Shown here: piece after piece, positions 56,099-64,000 of the stretch
Layout of the letters: each line of letters starts with the position of its first letter
Position numbering within the stretch: the stretch's first letter is position 1
Assembly (NCBI GenBank): GCA_013115145.1
Contig: JAAPAO010000120.1
Coordinates: 1-64,000, forward strand
Reading direction: 5' to 3'
DNA from: Perkinsus chesapeaki ATCC PRA-425
Taxonomy: Eukaryota; Protista; Perkinsozoa
Length of the DNA stretch: 64,000 bases
The notes under the pieces: model-generated
What the model saw: the letters and a program-made list of their open reading frames with translations, nothing else
Database searches by the model: none
Told to the model about the DNA's origin: nothing
Made by a program: the position numbers and the translations under genes

Positions 56099-57596
56099 CT
56101 ACTCCAGACTAAGCATGTTCAAAGAGTCTAAGACTAGACGATCGGTATCACACGGCTGCCAGTCGGGACTCTGTAGCATATTCTTGTGATGATCTCCTTG
56201 CTCCTCTTCAACTAATTTCGCCGATGTACCCGTCATCGTTGACAAACCGCCGTACTGTCCACCATTTGCACCAAACAAGAGCGTTGGTGCTGAAACGAAG
56301 CTACTGGTATCGTCCAAAGGCATGGTGTCCCATAACAAAGATTCCAATCCAGGACCAGTCGGCACGCTCGATATAGTAGGAACCCACGTGTCGCTCGCAC
56401 CCCCAACTGAACTGGGCGGCGGCGGCGGAGGTGGTGATGCCGCACTCTGCATCGGGGCCATCTGAGAGTCCTCCGCAATTGTGGGCTGCTGCAGCTGTTG
56501 CTTTGGATGATGATGTTGTTGCTGTTGACGTTTAGTAGCCCTAAGCTGCTGTTGGCGCTCCCTTCGCATCTGTGCCAGCTTTTTAAAGGGAATCTGCTCA
56601 TTATGCTCTCCAAACACCAACGGCAAGGCATCATCGTCATCCTCCGGAGTACAATCCAAAATTGGAGAATTTATCAGACGATTAACATTCGCCTGCAAGC
56701 CCTGCACACGGGCGTATACTACTTCGCAGACTTTACTGCTCTTAACACCTGGGAGCCTAGAATTCTTGAAAGCGTTGAAGAACGTCCTAGTGTATTTAGG
56801 ATCGGTGACGTTGACAAAGGCGTAACCAAAATTACACCGTGAACGGAAGTCAATGGGCATATAGACAAAGTCAAATGATCCTACCGGCATACGGGCCATA
56901 ACCTCATCAACCAATAACTGTCGAGAATACTTGTTTGGTATATTCTTCAGCATCAGCGTGGTTCTAGGATCAGTCGAATCCATGGTAATGGTATTTGAAA
57001 CATTCGGCTGAGATCTCCTTCTCTGCCGAGCACTTGAAGATGCCAATCCGGGCTTGTGGCTTGCCGTAATCCCTCTAGGCGTCCGATTAGTAACAAGCGG
57101 TGGATGAAGAGCATTGGCGCCGGTGGCATACGAGGAAGAATGGTTACCGACTGTATAGGATGACGACGAAGTAGGCATACCTCCCTGCTGCCCATCGCCC
57201 ATAACGCTAATAGGAGCGAAAGGCTCGGCCTCAATACCGCTACCAAGCGCTGATGAGGTTTGCCCAGTGATACCGTTGCTATCTGAATAATTTAGATAAT
57301 ATATGCAATTAGGATAATTGAGATATACCTATACTAGGGGCAACGGTGGGAGATGTGTGATGGTCTCCAGAAGCCCTAGGAGGCACCCCTCTGCCATTCT
57401 GCCGTTTAGCTACTATTTCTTCGGCCAATTTCCATATATCTTCGAGGCTTTGACCGGACGATCTTATTTCGGGATTCGCCAGCAGCATTGCAGCGGTCTG
57501 AGGTAATGCTATCAACCTCTCAGGAATCTTTCATTCTCTTACCTCAACGACCGGACCATTCGGAGAATCCGCTGGAACATCGTCGTTTACCGGCAT
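56099..57596 (-). CDS. Mei2-like RRM protein, copy 2
   Basis: RTTLMLKNIPNKYSRQLLVDE...FDFVYMPIDFRSRCNFGYAFVNV...ARVQG lies in one long exon. Two short 5' exons start MPVNDDVPADSPNGPVVE at 57596. Confidence 0.9.
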
Positions 57597-57757: not shown

Positions 57758-60700
57758 ATGGGTGATGATCCTTATGCGGATCTTATCACTGAAAGGGGCG
57801 ATATGTGGCTTGGGCGGGAGGATTGCGGTCAGCTGGTAACCTCTGGAGTATCTTCGGGTATCTTTGAGCTCGTACAGGTCCACGACCTGAAAACGCCCTT
57901 TAATGGAGTTGTAGGGTTAACGGAAGCCATGAAGGTTATGGTGCGAGACGATGCCAAGCGCCGGTTACTAACAATGATAAACCGGGCCGGTACGAGGCTC
58001 GTTGAATATGTAAAAATCACCGTAGATCTCTCTGAACAGCTTATCTCCAGGTCGAGCGAACGCTGGAAATCGACGAGCTCTCGCGGGGCACAATGTTTAT
58101 GCAGCGTAATAAAATGTGTTTTTCCTGGAAAGCTTTGTAGTCAGGCCAGGAGGTCGACATTGGGCTCTCTATCTTGGAGGCAGTGGAGCTTATGCGATAC
58201 GCGGAGGACAAGAACGGGGTGCCCGTGAGAAAGAGCACTGTGGAATTGGTAGTGTCAGTGGGGACATAGGGAAGGTGGTCAGGGTCTCTATACAGATTCA
58301 TGATTGTCCTCCGGAATGGTCTGAGGGCGGAGGGCCAATGGTCGAAGGGGATGATATGAAAATCTCGAGGATAATCTATCACATACTAGACAATGCTCTC
58401 CGTTACACCGAATCCGTAGGAGGCCGGGAGTTAGTGTGTCATTGTAAGCATCCTCCGCAGGGAAGCGTGACGGTCTCCGGCAGACAAAGCTCCGACTTTA
58501 TAACTATCACTATAGCGGATACCGGTATAGGTATCGATCCTGACCGGCATGATGAGTAGGCTGTTCCTGTTGTGGTGCCGTAGCAATTGTCTCTCGTAGG
58601 ATTTTCATACCGTTTCGTCGACTGGCGTACCCATCGGATGGATGCCTCGGACTAGGCCTCTCAGTTGTCCTCGAAGTAAGCCTGTTCGCGCTTATGCTGC
58701 CTAAATTTTGTATAGACTCTTCATTTGATGGGCGGAGCGATTAGTGTTGTGTCTCCGGGTCGAGGCCAAGGCACCACCGTTACTGTTAAAATACCAATGA
58801 AGATGAACTCATCAGTGCCGCTACAGACGTAAGGATAAGCAGCAATCACCATTTGGATGGTCCTATCAGGTTCGATCGAGGCCCGGAGGGGTTCGGTCTC
58901 TACTTGAACATGGACCATCCTAGACCGTCACAAAGGCTGTTGATGAAGCACACAGTTGGGCTACTGGCCCATGAGCTTCGGATACCATTTCTGGGTGTTA
59001 TTGGGTCGAGCGACTATCTGGTAGTGATGGTTGTTCAGCCTCAGGAGGAGGCAATAGGTATTTGGCAGGTTCGTACGGAGGAGAAAAAACCGTTACAAAA
59101 GCAATTGGGAATGATAAATCGATGCGGCATTCGGTAGTAGAAGAGCAGCTGTTTGTAATACTACCGCCGCCCTTTATTAGACTGGTTGATGTTATTGAAG
59201 TAGTCAAGGATGCTGCACTTATGTTAGAGTTACCTCCTGGTCTATCCCTTAGAGCAGTAAGGGGGGGAGTGATCCAGTCCTTTTATAAGCCTTAGTCCTT
59301 TTATAAGCCTTAGTCCTTTCATAAGCCTTAGTCCATTTATAAGCCTTAGTCCTTTCATAAGCCTTAGTCCATTTATAAGCCTTAGTCCTTTCATAAGCCT
59401 TAGTCCATTTATAAGCCTTAGTCCTTTCATAAGCCTCAGTCCTTTCATAAGCCTCAGTCCTTTTATAAGGTCGTTTGGTCTATCAGGTTAAAGTGCCCCT
59501 ACTGGTCGAGAATGCTCATGCCCAGCTCGATGTCGCTAAGGTATTATTTATCATAGTTTATCACCGTCTCAAACTCATTCAGGATAAACGAAACCAGCCG
59601 ATGAAAAAGCGAGAAGTCAACTTCTTCAACGAGTGTCCAGCCACACTTCCCGAAATACAAGGGGATGAAGCCCAGCTGGCAAAGGTGCTGCCGCCCGCCG
59701 GGCTCGCAGGGAATATGATATAGCGAGTCTTCAGGTTATCGAACATGTTGCTGAGAACGCACTGAAGTTTACTAATAAGGGTCATGTTAGGATAGACGCC
59801 AAGGCAACCAAGGATACCGTAGGCATCTGCTAAATCTATGGCGTTGGGGGTATATATACTCCTTATGGTTGATAGAGTCAGCATTTATATTAGTTCGGTC
59901 GTTTGAATCCTGCTTGAGGGTCTGGTATGTCAGTTGTGATAGGTAACAATAATTGTTGAGGACACCGGTATTGGTATACCTGACGAGGACCAGGAGAGGA
60001 TTTTTCAACCTTTTTTTCGGTAATCCCGTGAGGCTGTGGCTGGCAGCTTTAGTGACGTCAGGCTGGAGCCCCAGAACTACTATGGCCTCGGCCTGGGCTT
60101 AACAGTCGTATACGAAATAGTTAAGCTGGCAGGAGGCAATCTGGAGATAGAATCCGCCAAGGATAAGGGCACCACGGTAGCGCTCACTTCCGTGGATTCG
60201 GACCGGGGAGTTCCTTTCAGTTTTATATACGTCTGCCGACAGTTCAGCCTAAGATGGCCTATTTGGATCACTTAGACGATGTTTTCGTGGAGGTCTCGAA
60301 GAAGTCTGCTCACGAATGTACGACAGATGGGGAATGTAGGCACTACTTTTGGCCACCCCCTGGGACCCGTCGCGCTTTCAGCCCAACCGCCCCCGCTGCC
60401 GGTCTCGAGCGAGTCGGTCAAAGAGGAGGTCGAGAAGCGGCCAACTGTTAGCTTTATGAACTCGGAAGAGTCATTATCACTTTTCTCACGGGAGAGTAGC
60501 CCGGTTGCGAGTAACATGCCTCAGGTGACTATCAAACCCATCGGATGGACTGATTCTTCTCACTCAGGCGTCTGGTAGCTCCATATCGCCTGACCAGCCT
60601 ACAGTCTCCGTAGAGAGCAAAGCGGCAAACCTTCAGCCCGTCGAGTCTGAACAAGCCGTGCAAGGCGCGGCTCAAACAGAGGTGGTTTCGAACGAAAACT
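57758..60700 (+). CDS. Tandem double histidine kinase (HisKA-HATPase-HisKA-HATPase)
   Basis: Module 1: VHDLKTPFNG (His 57881), ILDNALRYT, DTGIGI, IFIPF, LGLGL. Module 2: AHELRIPFLG (His 58970), VAENALKFT, DTGIGI, IFQPF, GLGLGL. The modules join in frame after removing a 41-nt GT-AG intron at 58829-58869. Confidence 0.88.
59276..59469. repeat. 18-bp minisatellite, ~10.5 copies, inside an intron of the histidine kinase gene
   Basis: The unit ATAAGCCTTAGTCC(T/A)TT(T/C) starts at 59285, 59303, 59321 ... 59447, with a partial copy at 59465. The variants TTTC and ATTT alternate over the central copies. Confidence 0.97.
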
Positions 60701-60725
60701 CGGGGATCATAGAGGTGGGGGAAAT

Positions 60726-62952
60726 ATGGACTCATTTTCATTTGAAGCGTTCAATAAAGGTTGTAGTTTACCTATGTACGGTTTATAGACTTTCAGGGAG
60801 ATATGGGCAGACTAAATTTGATTCGAAAGTCGGATCATCTTTAGTATCGATTTCTGAACTTTCGGCCCGTCAGAGGCCCTACAGCCTTGTGATAGGAAAT
60901 GAAAAGAAGGTATGAATCTTTGAAAGAAGAGCGAGATCTGTTGGATCGTCGAAGGACCGAAGAGAACGATCGATCGGTGCGCGAGGTAGAGCATCTTATG
61001 GTTATGCAGTGAGATATCATATGACTAGATACAACTGTTGAAGAAAGACTTAGGGTCGACCAAAGAGGAGAATCATTGTAAGCTGACTCTAGAGGGCGTG
61101 GGTTCGATCCTTCGGCTCGACATATTTTACATTCTATTTTGGAATTACAGAAGACTGCCCTTGTTAGCTCTACAAGCTTCGCTATGTCGACGAGATGAAG
61201 AGATAAAGCGCCTCGAAAAGGAAAAAGGTAAACGCCGTCGTCTTTGCCACTACCGCCATGGGGCACGGCTGCACCACTATTTCAGCCGCGGCGTTGTCGA
61301 GAGCGGAAAACGCCGAGGCTCAGCTTGTCGAAGAGAAACGTCAAAGATCGGAGGAGGCGAAAAACCAGTCCACTCCTCCGAAAATTATAGTCGCCAAGGC
61401 AAGAATTTCGTGGCGCGTTGGAATCGAAGTGCCTGATCAGGACCCGTACCCAGAGGAGGGCTCAGAGGCGTCGGAACTCCGGCGTCGGCTTGAAGAATCG
61501 GAGGAACAACTCCATACGACACGCCAGCAACTCGGAGCGGCTAGAACCGAGGTATGCGAAATGCTGCTTTGGTTTGTGCTTTAGTGATTCCGGCCTTTTC
61601 AGCTCGAACTACTCAAGAAGGAGGAGCGATCGTTCGACGAGACAGCGACCGTCAAGAGTTTGCGATCTAAACTGGACCGGGCGAATGACGCGGTGAGTGG
61701 AGGAAATCTTCGTGGATGCACTGGTAGCGGCCACGTTCAGGTTGATGACCTCCGAGGAGAATTGGAAGATTCTTTGGTGGAGCATAAAGCCATGACTCGC
61801 GAGCTTGAGAAGCTCAGGAGCCAGCGCACTGGTGGGCAGAATAGGACTGAAGATGGACGCGTGAGATTTTCACATCTGGTGCCTTTGAACTTTATCGTTT
61901 TAGTCGGTCATACATGCGGTAGAGCAGCTGAAAGGGATAGCCAGTATTATGCAGCGAGAAATAGAGGAACATGTAAGGAAGCCTTAAGGCTATAGTGGGC
62001 CATTCGGTCTCTGTGAAATTGCCTGGACGTTGAGACTGCCGCTACTCATAGACCTGTTATCGGTTTTGTCAACCTGGAAGTCATTGATGTTAGGTATCTC
62101 GGCGAGGAACGGAGACATCCGAGGCATTGCGCTCCTTACGAGAAGAGAACGAGAAGCTGAGGGCTGAGTTGAGGGGATGCGAGCGCGATGGACGGGTGAG
62201 ATACCAATTGCCTTGTTGCACAGCATGTCGTATACGTGCAGATTCCCGGTAATCCACAGGGAGAAGAGGTTGAGGCCGAATTGAAGCGCACTATAGAGTG
62301 AGTGAAACTGCCTTACCTTTTCCGGGAGTGAGATGCCGTGTCTGTAGCCGCCTTCGAGCGGACCTTGGCCATAGAAGTGCTCGGATACTCAAGCTGCAGC
62401 AGGAGATACGACTGCTACGTTCGCATATGGCAGATCTCAAACTAGCTTCTCAGGAGACCGATCGAGCGTCAAGGTCTGCCTTAACATTTATTAGTGTGAT
62501 TATGGCTGCTTCGAATCAGATTCTATAATCTTGCCAATAACCGGATGAGTGGTACGGCCCCAGTGTTCTATCGTCGATGGCGATGCCCGAGAGCTGCTGA
62601 AGGTAGGTCGGTTTTTCCTGGCTCTAGTCGAATCCTTGGCTCTATTCAGACATGGTGGAGTACGACTACTCTACAGGGGAGCTCCCTAGTAACCCTCTAC
62701 CAGCCCTGCCCGCTTCACAGTCGTATCGATCTCCCTCAACAATCCTTCCGGAGACTGCAAGATCCCTGGCTTCACCAACCGAGATACCGTGGTCGACGTG
62801 AGACGCCATCCATAGCCAGTGTCGGCTCCTATTTGAACCATTTCAGGCCGGCTCCACCTCGGACTCCTTCCGGTGGATCCCGTTATCGCAGTCCGCTGTT
62901 GCGACGCCTATATGGCCCAGACGATGCGACAGGGCCGAGAACTTCACCATAG
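60726..62952 (+). CDS. Multi-exon coiled-coil protein, possibly the C-terminal extension of the double histidine kinase
   Basis: Heptad-rich exons (EMKRRYESLKEERDLL, ELRRRLEESEEQL, LRSLREENEKLRAEL, ILKLQQEIRLLR). The frame 60658-60827 stays open across the putative boundary with the kinase gene. Confidence 0.55.
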
Positions 62953-62963
62953 CTTTGCCGCCT

Positions 62964-64000
62964 TCAAGGCTGATAACATTTCCGCACCATTACCCCTAAG
63001 TTTACCATGGTATCATGAAGCCTAGAATACCCCACCTGTGATGTACAGACAATCTTGATGATTTGTGTTATAGTTTGGGTGGGAGGAGTGGAATGTCTAT
63101 GAATTCCGTACCGCAGACAGTAGAGACGCATTTCACTGCTTCTTGACGAGGACCTCGCCCCACTATTCACCTTGCCGGCCTGGAGACTTGGTCATACCGT
63201 CAGTGACCGCTGAGTCTTCCAATCAGTTTGAGACAACTGCTTCGCTTTGCCTCTTGACGGTTGTGTTGTATCGGCGGGTGGTTCGCATTTGTGTGCTCAA
63301 TGGCGTGTCATTAGTCAACTCTGAGGGTTGTGTTGTAGTCCATCTTGTTTCCCGATAAGACTGTAGGCCACATCTAGGAGTAGTTACCCACATGTCCGAC
63401 ATATACTCTGTGATCAAGTTGCAGGAGCGCTTCGTGCCAGCCGACCAAGTACGATCTCCAGCCTGACATAACGACCAGCTCCTCTCCCTTTGTAGATTAA
63501 CTCATTGATGTCTGACAAACGAATTGTCCAGCTGCGTGATTTGAAGTGGGGGCACGATCAACTCCTAGGAGCATAGCACTGAGGTTTTGCCTAGGTTCGA
63601 GATTAAATCAAAAATCGAGCAAGACCGTGTTGTGACTGGGATGGTATACAAGGTCTCGCCGACTCGAACAGGAAAGTTGGGCAGAGGCCGATTGGCTCGG
63701 ACCGCTCAGTACGGTCTAGGGCTTGTGTGCGGAGCTCAACGTACCGATATGTTTAGGTATGCCGACGCCTGGATCACAGACTTCCACCCTTACAGTCCGA
63801 CCTATGCCCGCCTGCGGATAACAGACACTGCGGCAGCCATAAAGCTTCATAGGGGAGATGTGTGGTATCTTCTGAATCCAGAACTAACAGCAGACGATGA
63901 CAAGGTGGTCCTTTGGTGTCCATCCTGTCTTGCACGCCAGTGTGGTCAGGGATCAGTGATGGCCCCAGTTGCACTTACAGTCGATTCCAAGGACAAAATG
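62964..64000 (-). CDS. Partial multi-exon hypothetical protein running off the window end
   Basis: Repeated minus-strand gtaagt/gttagt/gtacgt...ag introns flank open exons (AGIGRTVRVEVCDPGVGIPKHI; DINELIYKGRGAGRYVRLEI). The frame is not fully resolved. Confidence 0.35.

What the first reader, a model, noticed from the sequence alone, without database searches (positions are those of the whole stretch)
57758..60260. Sensorless, receiverless tandem double histidine kinase assembled by splicing
Seen: two complete HisKA+HATPase_c modules, each with H, N, G1, F and G2 boxes, become one ORF when a 41-nt intron (58829-58869) is removed. Only ~25 aa precede the first phospho-His, the divergent Mei2-like ATG is ~160 bp upstream, and I found no TM, PAS/GAF or receiver domain in the gene or window. 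The modules share unusual segments (MINRAGTRLVEYVE vs MINRCGIRLVDVIE), suggesting internal duplication. Established: eukaryotic sensor kinases are typically hybrids carrying a receiver, and apicomplexans are generally reported to lack two-component kinases. Inference: this could be a single-chain pseudo-dimeric kinase or an atypical phosphorelay component in a parasite lineage.
Basis: partly seen in the sequence, partly recalled or inferred. Interest (0 to 1): 0.78.

Follow-up and report, generated by a model that had tools for sequence, protein, structure and literature searches.

The report
Perkinsus tandem double histidine kinase gene
This is a real, intron-rich gene of a Perkinsus shellfish parasite (not an apicomplexan) that fuses two complete histidine-kinase cores in one chain with no sensor or receiver but a long coiled-coil tail; it belongs to a small, conserved, uncharacterised protist family whose P. 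marinus member is already annotated.

Summary
The two HisKA+HATPase_c modules are real, and the 41-nt intron at 58829-58869 is exactly as described. It is a GT-AG intron at the same position in P. marinus and P. olseni, with unrelated intron sequence and conserved flanks (VPLQT|FDRGPEGFG).

- The kinase core needs 16 GT-AG introns removed, not one.
- The gene does not end at 60260. It runs to the TAG at 62950-62952 and adds a tail of roughly 450-550 aa, largely helical and coiled-coil-like.
- The host is Perkinsus (Perkinsozoa), where histidine kinases are already reported, not an apicomplexan.

The core is 79-84% identical to P. marinus XP_002768146.1 ("two component sensor histidine kinase, putative") and its P. 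olseni orthologues, with conserved synteny.

Single-chain tandem architecture is independently supported:
- a paralogue (contig C802) reads across the junction in one open frame;
- intronless single ORFs occur on compact eukaryotic metagenome contigs;
- complete MMETSP transcripts carry both modules.

A module tree shows one ancient internal duplication. Both ATP-binding domains stay intact family-wide, while either His (never both) can be lost. That fits a hard-wired asymmetric pseudo-dimer, but this is inferred, not shown.

Verdict: new variant of a known kind (dual kinases), moderate interest. This scan also noted the paralogue elsewhere in this genome.

The parts
57758..62952 (+). Whole gene: ATG at 57758 to stop TAG at 62950-62952. 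The core was modelled exon by exon. The tail is only bracketed by collinear matches.
   Evidence: tblastn of P0002, P0163 and P0164 is collinear from 57758 to 62916. The C-terminal ...SPLLRRLYG... matches the end of P0163. Same start Met as the P. marinus and P. olseni models.
57758..58105 (+). N-terminal 27 aa plus DHp1 (HisKA, module 1). Exons 57758-57835, 57878-58009, 58051-58105. Phospho-acceptor His28 = 57881-57883.
   Evidence: Pfam HisKA E 2.5e-5 on exon 57878-58009. H box QLVHDLKTPFNG is identical to P. marinus.
58106..58144 (+). Intron 3 (39 nt, phase 1, GT-AG). It contains the in-frame TAG at 58138-58140.
   Evidence: The same phase-1 intron position, CAG C|GTAAG..., is seen in the P. 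marinus locus L028 and the P. olseni locus L029.
58145..58828 (+). CA1 (HATPase_c, module 1). Exons 58145-58248, 58296-58415, 58461-58555, 58600-58675, 58716-58828. Asn156 (N box) = 58392-58394. The Asp of G1 (DTGIG) = 58518-58520. G2 (GLGLS) starts at 58649.
   Evidence: Pfam HATPase_c E 1.5e-8 and 0.034 on the pieces. Own-genome scan 48.2 bits. Motif table.
58829..58869 (+).
   Evidence: Same position in three Perkinsus species. The intron sequences and lengths are unrelated, while the flanking VPLQT|FDRGPEGFG is conserved.
58870..59256 (+). Conserved linker (FDRGPEGFGLY...) plus DHp2. Exons 58870-59020, 59069-59133, 59181-59256. His292 = 58970-58972.
   Evidence: The linker is identical to P. 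marinus and lies upstream of the first possible module-2 ATG at 58911. M1/M2 alignment. AF2 helical hairpin 281-345 in the orthologue.
59257..59486 (+). Intron 11 (230 nt), carrying an 18-nt minisatellite at 59276-59469.
   Evidence: TRF: period 18, 10.8 copies, 91% matches. GT-AG boundaries.
59487..60238 (+). CA2 (HATPase_c, module 2). Exons 59487-59540, 59583-59684, 59735-59818, 59943-60019, 60062-60176, then 60221 onward. Asn415 = 59756-59758. The Asp of G1 = 59961-59963. G2 starts at 60084.
   Evidence: Pfam HATPase_c E 4.5e-7, 2.1e-6 and 1.7e-5 on exons. Own-genome scan 59.2 bits. Motifs.
60177..60220 (+). Intron 16 (44 nt, GT-AG). Splicing gives KGTTFYIRLPT.
   Evidence: P. olseni reads KGTTFRIRLPT and P. 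marinus reads KGTTVSIHLPT. tblastn continues in frame from 60221.
60239..62952 (+). C-terminal tail: a low-complexity stretch followed by charged, heptad-like helical exons. No Pfam domain. Exon boundaries not modelled.
   Evidence: Collinear weak to moderate tblastn matches at 60221-60400, 61285-62130, 62094-62780 and 62848-62916. AF2 of the orthologue: residues 520-604 are low confidence, and helices span 605-855. Only coiled-coil-type sub-threshold Pfam hits.
56099..57596 (-). Divergent neighbour: a Mei2-like RRM_2 gene. The candidate ATG at 57596-57594 is unverified.
   Evidence: Pfam RRM_2 E 3.9e-28. The same divergent neighbour is present in P. marinus and P. olseni. ATG check.

Best explanation
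Shown:
- One gene (57758-62952, + strand) of a Perkinsus species encodes a soluble protein of roughly 1,000-1,100 aa.
- Its layout is 27 N-terminal residues, a complete class-I histidine-kinase core (DHp1 with His28, then CA1), a conserved linker of about 33 aa (DRGPEGFG motif), and a second complete core (DHp2 with His292, then CA2).
- A low-complexity stretch and a long C-terminal tail, largely helical and coiled-coil-like, follow.
- There is no sensor, receiver or HPt domain.
- It is the orthologue of P. marinus XP_002768146.1.
- It belongs to a small protist family that arose from a single ancient internal duplication of one kinase core.

Inferred mechanism:
- Both CA domains bind ATP.
- The two DHp hairpins supply the four-helix bundle that a normal kinase gets by homodimerising, most likely with each other inside one chain. 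This would be a hard-wired asymmetric pseudo-dimer.
- Phosphate goes onto His28 and/or His292 and then directly to separately encoded receiver proteins. The genome has receiver-cyclase-like and cNMP-receiver proteins.
- Input comes through the tail or bound partners, not through a ligand-binding N-terminal sensor.
For: Gene and splice:
- 16 canonical introns give a stop-free 559-aa core that is 79-84% identical to P0002, P0163 and P0164.
- The inter-module intron is conserved in position in three species, with conserved coding flanks. Synteny is conserved.

Single chain:
- Paralogue L021:4544-5254(-) is one 237-aa open frame running from the N box of CA1 into the H box of module 2.
- P0001, P0007 and P0167 are intronless single ORFs of 586-716 aa on compact eukaryotic contigs.
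- P0005 and P0151 are MMETSP transcripts labelled 'type:complete', and P0006 is another MMETSP transcript ORF with the same layout.

Kinase cores:
- Pfam hits on exons and orthologues.
- Foldseek top hits are ZraS, HK853, WalK and CpxA, E down to 8e-14.
- AF2 core pLDDT is mostly 80-94.

No sensor or receiver.

One ancient duplication: module tree.

Hints of a pseudo-dimer:
- N, G1 and G2 boxes are intact in both CA domains of all members. H1 is lost only in P0006/P0152. H2 is lost in P0005, P0001, P0167 and P0007. Never both.
- All four domains are similarly conserved, 33-41% mean pairwise identity.
- pTM is 0.69 for the 586-aa member even though about 20% of it is low confidence.
- In the ESM Atlas, bacterial two-kinase proteins align across both modules at TM 0.70-0.75.
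Against: - No RNA evidence from this species.
- No model coordinates or PAE were available, so DHp1-DHp2 packing was never seen.
- The coiled-coil tail would equally allow a homodimer in which each module pairs with its twin.
- No Hpt was detected in the genome (a weak negative for a short, intron-split domain), and the receiver partners are guesses.
- The family sample is small (about 7 clusters), so 'never both His lost' could be chance.
- The module-2 H box has Ile in place of the usual Thr/Asn after the His (HELRIP), so the two modules may not be functionally equivalent. This point rests on my own knowledge of the E/DxxT/N phosphatase motif.
Confidence: 0.7

Rival explanations
1. Homodimer of tandems. 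The coiled-coil tail brings two chains together in parallel, and each core forms a canonical homodimeric DHp bundle with its twin (1:1' and 2:2'). The protein is then simply two ordinary kinases on one polypeptide, as assumed for dual HKs, with no intra-chain pseudo-dimer.
For: - Long predicted helices at 605-855 in the orthologue.
- A conserved C-terminal helix even in the short members (A1; H548-585).
- All four domains are equally conserved.
Against: - Lineage-specific loss of one His with retention of that module's DHp and both CA domains is harder to explain if each module works alone.
- The linker is short (about 33 aa) and has a conserved motif.
Confidence: 0.3
2. Repurposed kinase-like protein. 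One or both modules no longer act in His-Asp signalling. The protein might be an ATP-binding scaffold, a pseudokinase regulator, or a Ser/Thr-type protein kinase of the GHKL kind, anchored by its coiled-coil tail.
For: - Neither His is universally conserved in the family.
- No Hpt and only a few receivers in the genome.
- No sensor domain.
Against: - In Perkinsus both H boxes are canonical (HDLKTP, HELRIP).
- N, G1, F and G2 boxes are intact in both modules.
- At least one His is kept in every member.
- Receivers exist in the genome.
Confidence: 0.15
3. Two adjacent genes. Module 1 ends at TAA 58830-58832, and module 2 starts at ATG 58911.
For: Unspliced, the frame stops at 58830, and an ATG follows 80 bp later.
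Against: - The linker FDRGPEGFGLYL lies upstream of that ATG and is identical in P. marinus.
- The intron position is conserved in three species, with diverged intron sequence.
- The paralogue, the intronless homologues and the transcripts all read through the junction.
Confidence: 0.03
4. A hidden sensor or receiver exon exists upstream or in the tail.
For: The tail exons were not modelled precisely. Short or divergent domains split by introns can escape six-frame Pfam scans.
Against: - The same start Met is used in the P. marinus and P. olseni models.
- Only about 160-240 bp separates the start from the divergent neighbour.
- Intronless members start 15-25 aa before H1, and their neighbouring genes are called 46-222 bp upstream.
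- No Response_reg, PAS or GAF in any full-length orthologue or on the contig.
Confidence: 0.03

Closest known systems
Perkinsus marinus XP_002768146.1 / EER00864.1 / UniProt C5LQX9, 'two component sensor histidine kinase, putative' (P0002), and P. olseni FOL46_007460 and FOZ62_010218 (P0164, P0163)
   Same: Orthologues.
- 79-84% identity over the 559-aa core.
- Same start Met, intron positions, linker and tail end.
- Same divergent RRM_2 neighbour.
   Different: - These are only automatic annotations. No paper naming these accessions was found.
- The P. olseni models P0164 and P0166 probably run on into the next gene (window 63593-64000).
Eukaryotic dual histidine kinases (fungal group XII such as Cryptococcus Tco2, Dictyostelium DhkD, Klebsormidium KniteHK1/2, Capsaspora CowczHK5), as reviewed in PMC6324907
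   Same: Two histidine-kinase cores in one eukaryotic polypeptide.
   Different: - From my own knowledge, those are large proteins in which each core is followed by a receiver. Here there is no receiver at all, the cores are fused through a 33-aa linker, only 27 aa precede H1, and a coiled-coil tail follows.
- The two modules here are each other's closest relatives.
- Fungal and amoebozoan dual HKs were not in my tree.
Bacterial two-kinase proteins (HK-REC-HK and similar; for example P0004 from Kofleriaceae, and P0090/P0233 from Bacteroidota, which is HK-HK-REC)
   Same: - Two or more HisKA+HATPase_c cores per chain.
- Predicted structures align across both modules, TM 0.70-0.75.
- P0090 has a 24-aa gap between cores.
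   Different: - 160 of 161 module pairs have at least 151 aa (a receiver) between the cores.
- They carry PAS/GAF sensors and receivers.
- Their modules do not group with this family in the tree.
Eukaryotic PAS-HK and rhodopsin-PAS-HK-REC proteins from protist transcriptomes (P0029/P0231, P0092)
   Same: Nearest outgroup of the family's modules in the tree, SH-aLRT 96.
   Different: They have a single kinase core, with sensor domains and (in P0092) a receiver.
Monomeric histidine kinase EL346 of Erythrobacter litoralis (own knowledge; cited in reviews found)
   Same: A precedent that a histidine kinase can work without homodimerising, using an intramolecular helical bundle.
   Different: It is HWE/HisKA_2 type, has one CA domain and a LOV sensor, and is bacterial. 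No homology beyond the superfamily is claimed.

Membership tests
Class-I (HisKA-type) histidine kinase core, module 1 | HisKA/DHp domain with an H box and a phospho-acceptor His | tested here: met
   Pfam HisKA E 2.5e-5 on exon 57878-58009 (just below the gathering score for the isolated exon). It passes in the orthologues P0002 and P0164. His28 sits in HDLKTPFNG.
Class-I (HisKA-type) histidine kinase core, module 1 | HATPase_c domain with N, G1, F and G2 boxes | tested here: met
   HATPase_c E 1.5e-8. Motifs NAL, DTGIG, IFIPF and GLGLS are present. Foldseek matches HK853, ZraS and CpxA (on the orthologue model).
Class-I (HisKA-type) histidine kinase core, module 2 | HisKA/DHp domain with an H box and a phospho-acceptor His | tested here: met
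   - The exon alone gets no Pfam hit.
- The orthologues have a second, weak HisKA stretch (P0165 203-256, P0001 287-326).
- His292 in HELRIPFLG aligns to His28.
- AF2 predicts a helical hairpin at 281-345.
Class-I (HisKA-type) histidine kinase core, module 2 | HATPase_c domain with N, G1, F and G2 boxes | tested here: met
   HATPase_c E 4.5e-7 and 2.1e-6 on exons. Motifs ENALKFT, DTGIG, IFQPF and GLGLGL are present.
Histidine kinase (functional) | ATP-dependent autophosphorylation on His and transfer to a receiver Asp | not testable with these tools
   Needs biochemistry.
Hybrid histidine kinase (the usual eukaryotic type) | Receiver (Response_reg) domain in the same chain | tested here: not met
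   No Response_reg on contig C223 at E <= 0.1, and none in P0002, P0163-P0167, P0001, P0003, P0005-P0007 or P0151.
Sensor histidine kinase | N-terminal input domain (TM, PAS, GAF, CHASE and so on) | tested here: not met
   - 27 aa before His28.
- No Pfam sensor domain in any member.
- Maximum KD19 hydropathy is 1.5-1.7, and it falls inside CA1.
- Intronless members start 15-25 aa before H1.
Dual histidine kinases (fungal group XII, DhkD type) | Two kinase cores in one chain | tested here: met
Dual histidine kinases (fungal group XII, DhkD type) | Each core followed by its own receiver, in a large multidomain protein | tested here: not met
   No receiver. The cores are 33 aa apart.
Dual histidine kinases (fungal group XII, DhkD type) | Common descent with fungal or amoebozoan dual HKs | not tested
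   No fungal or amoebozoan dual HK sequences were in the tree. The tree shows only that the duplication here is family-internal.
Perkinsus / protist tandem-HK family (P0001-P0003, P0005-P0007, P0163-P0167) | Collinear HK-linker(RGPxGFG)-HK core, and M1 and M2 falling in the family's M1 and M2 clades | tested here: met
   Alignments A1 and A2. Motif table. Tree: WIN_M1 in the M1 clade (97), WIN_M2 in the M2 clade (98).

The most novel reading that the evidence does not exclude
The family is a natural single-chain 'heterodimeric' histidine kinase. DHp1 and DHp2 form the four-helix bundle within one polypeptide, so the functional asymmetry that ordinary homodimeric kinases adopt transiently is fixed genetically. 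That would explain why lineages can lose either His but keep both DHp and both ATP-binding domains. It would act as a soluble, sensor-less kinase whose activity is set by its coiled-coil tail or partners, and it would phosphorylate stand-alone receivers directly, without an HPt relay, which is an unusual wiring for a eukaryote.
Probability: 0.35. Interest if true: 0.7.

Novelty: new variant of a known kind. Interest (0 to 1): 0.5.

Why it matters
Histidine kinases work as homodimers that behave asymmetrically. A natural covalent fusion of two diverged cores, with complementary loss of the acceptor His in different lineages, would be a ready-made system for studying cis versus trans autophosphorylation and dimer asymmetry.

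For Perkinsus, an economically important shellfish parasite, it adds a non-hybrid, sensor-less kinase to a very small two-component repertoire. It also raises the question of which of the few receiver proteins it feeds. Animals lack two-component systems.

The finding also corrects the first-stage premise. This is not evidence for two-component signalling in Apicomplexa.

Tried and rejected
1. Pseudogene, non-canonical intron or assembly error at the in-frame TAG 58138. I first found no frame-preserving GT-AG intron and considered a CG-AG intron or a spurious C at 58105. The P. marinus and P. olseni loci then showed a phase-1 donor CAG C|GTAAG. The matching canonical 39-nt intron 58106-58144 exists in the window. 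Idea rejected.
2. A second allele in the assembly, to check that site. Only one copy exists.
3. A frame-0 read-through alternative (58113-58556 is open). Rejected because the frame-1 translation is 76-100% identical to the orthologues.
4. Rejected in favour of intron 60177-60220.
5. Bacterial origin of P0001, P0007 and P0167. Rejected, because their neighbours are eukaryotic genes (MINDY, mRNA triphosphatase, C2, EF-hand/PH kinase, Rft-1).
6. Seeing the DHp1-DHp2 contact in the AF2 models. No coordinates or PAE are exposed, so only pLDDT, pTM and secondary structure were usable.
7. The supplement of PMC6324907, to identify PmariHK1-3. It is not held.
8. Searches for the accession numbers and for 'tandem/dual/pseudo-dimer histidine kinase' found nothing on this family.
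9. Species name. The genus is supported by orthology. 'P. chesapeaki' comes only from earlier agents' notes and was not independently tested.
Full report
**What is in the sequence.**

The region is a eukaryotic gene with many short introns. No frame is open across it.

I searched the exons by reference, piece by piece. Pfam finds:
- HisKA on 57878-58009 (E 2.5e-5);
- HATPase_c on 58113-58556 (1.5e-8) and 58716-58829 (module 1);
- HATPase_c on 59669-59830, 59943-60020 (4.5e-7) and 60024-60272 (2.1e-6) (module 2).

A six-frame scan of the whole assembly (G000, 41.7 Mb) gives the same two HATPase_c modules on this contig.

**A note on method.**

The joined, spliced protein was not handed to any database, family or structure tool.

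Exons were joined only inside local scripts, from window coordinates. This was done to check the reading frame and to run local BLAST, MAFFT and IQ-TREE against proteins already fetched. For database and structure work I used the P. marinus orthologue P0002 as a proxy.

**Gene model.**

Comparison with the orthologous proteins and their genomic loci gives 17 exons and 16 GT-AG introns for the kinase core.

| Intron | Coordinates | Note |
|---|---|---|
| 1 | 57836-57877 | |
| 2 | 58010-58050 | |
| 3 | 58106-58144 | contains the in-frame TAG at 58138 |
| 4 | 58249-58295 | |
| 5 | 58416-58460 | |
| 6 | 58556-58599 | |
| 7 | 58676-58715 | |
| 9 | 59021-59068 | |
| 10 | 59134-59180 | |
| 11 | 59257-59486 | 230 nt, with an 18-nt minisatellite |
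| 12 | 59541-59582 | |
| 13 | 59685-59734 | |
| 14 | 59819-59942 | 124 nt |
| 15 | 60020-60061 | |
| 16 | 60177-60220 | |

- The result is a stop-free 559-aa translation to 60400, with His28 and His292 as the two H-box histidines.
- An in-frame TAG at 58138 first looked like a defect. It lies in intron 3, a phase-1 intron at the same position as in P. marinus and P. olseni.
Intron 16 gives ...KGTTFYIRLPT..., matching P. olseni KGTTFRIRLPT.
- Collinear matches to the Perkinsus proteins continue to 62916. The stop is TAG at 62950-62952, and the C-terminus ...SPLLRRLYG... matches the end of P0163.
- The tail exons were bracketed, not modelled.

**Whose gene it is.**

- The core is 79% identical to P. 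marinus XP_002768146.1, "two component sensor histidine kinase, putative" (P0002). It is 81-84% identical to the P. olseni proteins P0164 and P0163.
- In both of those species the gene has the same divergent RRM_2 (Mei2-like) neighbour as in the window.
- The genome is therefore a Perkinsus species distinct from those two. Earlier agents' notes call it P. chesapeaki, and I did not test the species.
- Perkinsus is a perkinsozoan, not an apicomplexan.
- A survey of eukaryotic histidine kinases reports none in the apicomplexan genomes it examined but three in P. marinus. The same survey reviews 'dual' kinases in fungi, Amoebozoa, Klebsormidium and Capsaspora (PMC6324907).

**Is it one chain?** Five independent lines say yes.

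1. The inter-module intron sits at the same phase-2 position in three Perkinsus species. The intron sequences and lengths are unrelated, while the flanks encode VPLQT|FDRGPEGFG in all three.
2. The conserved linker lies upstream of the only ATG that a separate module-2 gene could use (58911).
3. A paralogue on contig C802 reads from the N box of CA1 through the linker into the H box of module 2 in one uninterrupted 237-aa frame (L021:4544-5254, minus strand).
4. A HMMER search of 1.84 billion representatives with that frame returned six proteins aligned across the junction. P0001 and P0007, and P0167 from the word search, are single intronless ORFs (586-716 aa) on compact contigs with eukaryotic neighbours and conserved synteny.
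5. P0003/P0151, P0005 and P0006 are MMETSP transcript ORFs, two of them labelled 'type:complete'.

Only two loci of this family exist in the window's genome.

**What it lacks and what it has.**

- No member carries Response_reg, PAS, GAF or any other Pfam domain apart from HisKA and the HATPase_c-type domains.
- There is no Response_reg on this contig and no Hpt in the genome. The Hpt negative is weak evidence.
- No hydrophobic segment outside CA1 reaches the usual TM range.
- All members begin 15-30 aa before H1.
- The Perkinsus and MMETSP proteins add a long C-terminal region after the second core. The short members still end in a conserved amphipathic helix.
- AlphaFold2 on the orthologue gives mean pLDDT 69 and core blocks mostly 80-94. 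It predicts DHp hairpins at 21-75 and 281-345 and two α/β CA domains.
- The same model has a low-confidence stretch at 520-604 and long helices at 605-855.
- Foldseek places each module with ZraS, HK853, WalK and CpxA cores.

**Origin.**

- Modules 1 and 2 of the window protein are 34% identical (E 2e-41).
- I built a maximum-likelihood tree of 78 modules: the family, bacterial two-module kinases and single-module kinases.
- All 18 family modules form one clade (SH-aLRT 99), split into an M1 clade (97) and an M2 clade (98). The duplication therefore happened once, before the family diversified.
- The nearest outgroup (96) is a pair of protist transcripts, a PAS-HK and a rhodopsin-PAS-HK-REC.
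- Two-kinase chains are common among the bacterial hits. However, 160 of 161 module pairs are at least 151 aa apart, with a receiver between them. Only P0090 (HK-HK-REC) is directly tandem.

**How it probably works.**

Shown: both cores have every sequence feature of active class-I kinases.

Family-wide, the N, G1 and G2 boxes are invariant in both CA domains, but the acceptor His is not:
- H1 is Ala in P0006/P0152.
- H2 is Tyr, Val, Val and Leu in P0005, P0001, P0167 and P0007.
- No member lacks both.

DHp2 and both CA domains are as conserved as DHp1, at 33-41% mean pairwise identity.

Inferred: the two DHp hairpins pair with each other. This gives a covalent asymmetric pseudo-dimer in which one His suffices. 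The phosphate would pass to stand-alone receiver proteins, and regulation would come through the tail or through partners.

Modest support for a defined inter-module geometry:
- pTM 0.69 for the 586-aa member;
- bacterial two-kinase models align across both modules at TM 0.70-0.75.

I could not inspect coordinates. The main rival is that the coiled-coil tail makes a parallel homodimer in which each module pairs with its twin.

**Novelty.**

- The gene is already annotated in P. marinus and P. olseni.
- It is probably one of the three P. marinus kinases counted in PMC6324907. I could not verify this, because the supplement is not held.
- I found no paper describing a receiver-less, sensor-less, directly tandem kinase family.
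- I rate it a new variant of a known kind (dual histidine kinases), of moderate interest.
- The scan also flagged what appears to be the C802 paralogue on another piece of this genome (s1-232789), and this same stretch in an overlapping window (s1-235089).

Noticed in passing
window 59276-59469: An 18-nt minisatellite (10.8 copies, 91% matches, consensus unit AGTCCTTTTATAAGCCTT) fills most of the 230-nt intron 11 of the kinase gene. Most other introns of the gene are 39-50 nt.
   Followed up: partly
G000:C802:43000-47100 (L021, minus strand): The second and only other tandem double-kinase locus in this genome.
- 39% identical to the window protein across the junction.
- The module-2 H box is degenerate (LAHMLVTP).
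- An assembly gap (run of N) lies in one intron.
- The representative search found no relative closer than 42% identity, so its orthologues in other Perkinsus species are either unannotated or absent.
   Followed up: partly
L024, L025, L026 (metagenome contigs ERZ19027509, SRR7812565, JGI 3300022752): Very compact, apparently intronless eukaryotic contigs (about one gene per kb). Gene order is conserved around the tandem kinase: OMP decarboxylase, MINDY, mRNA triphosphatase, C2/FYVE, tandem HK, EF-hand/PH kinase, Rft-1, UDPGP, ADK. The organism is unknown.
   Followed up: no
window 63593-64000 and P0164/P0166: The two longest P. olseni models (1462 and 1494 aa) continue into a region matching window 63593-64000. 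That is beyond the stop at 62950 used by the shorter models, so it is probably a fusion with the downstream gene. The P. marinus model (856 aa) ends earlier than the P. olseni ones.
   Followed up: no
whole genome G000: No Hpt (PF01627) match at E <= 0.1 in the six-frame scan. Response_reg matches exist at C3026, C387, C2991 and C343, and further kinase loci at C2991, C1995 and C1165. The phosphorelay may lack a recognisable HPt.
   Followed up: no
P0092 (MMETSP transcript, 1151 aa): A bacteriorhodopsin-PAS-HisKA-HATPase_c-receiver protein from a marine protist transcriptome. Together with the PAS-HK P0029 it is the nearest outgroup of the tandem family's modules.
   Followed up: no
window 58871-58897 and family alignment: The inter-module linker carries a strongly conserved motif, (D/N/E)(R/K)GP(E/L/F/I)GFG(x)(Y/W), in all members except P0007. 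Its function is unknown.
   Followed up: no
window 56099-57596 (minus strand): A Mei2-like RRM_2 gene is arranged head-to-head with the kinase gene, with about 160 bp between the candidate ATGs. The pairing is conserved in P. marinus and P. olseni, which suggests a shared bidirectional promoter.
   Followed up: partly
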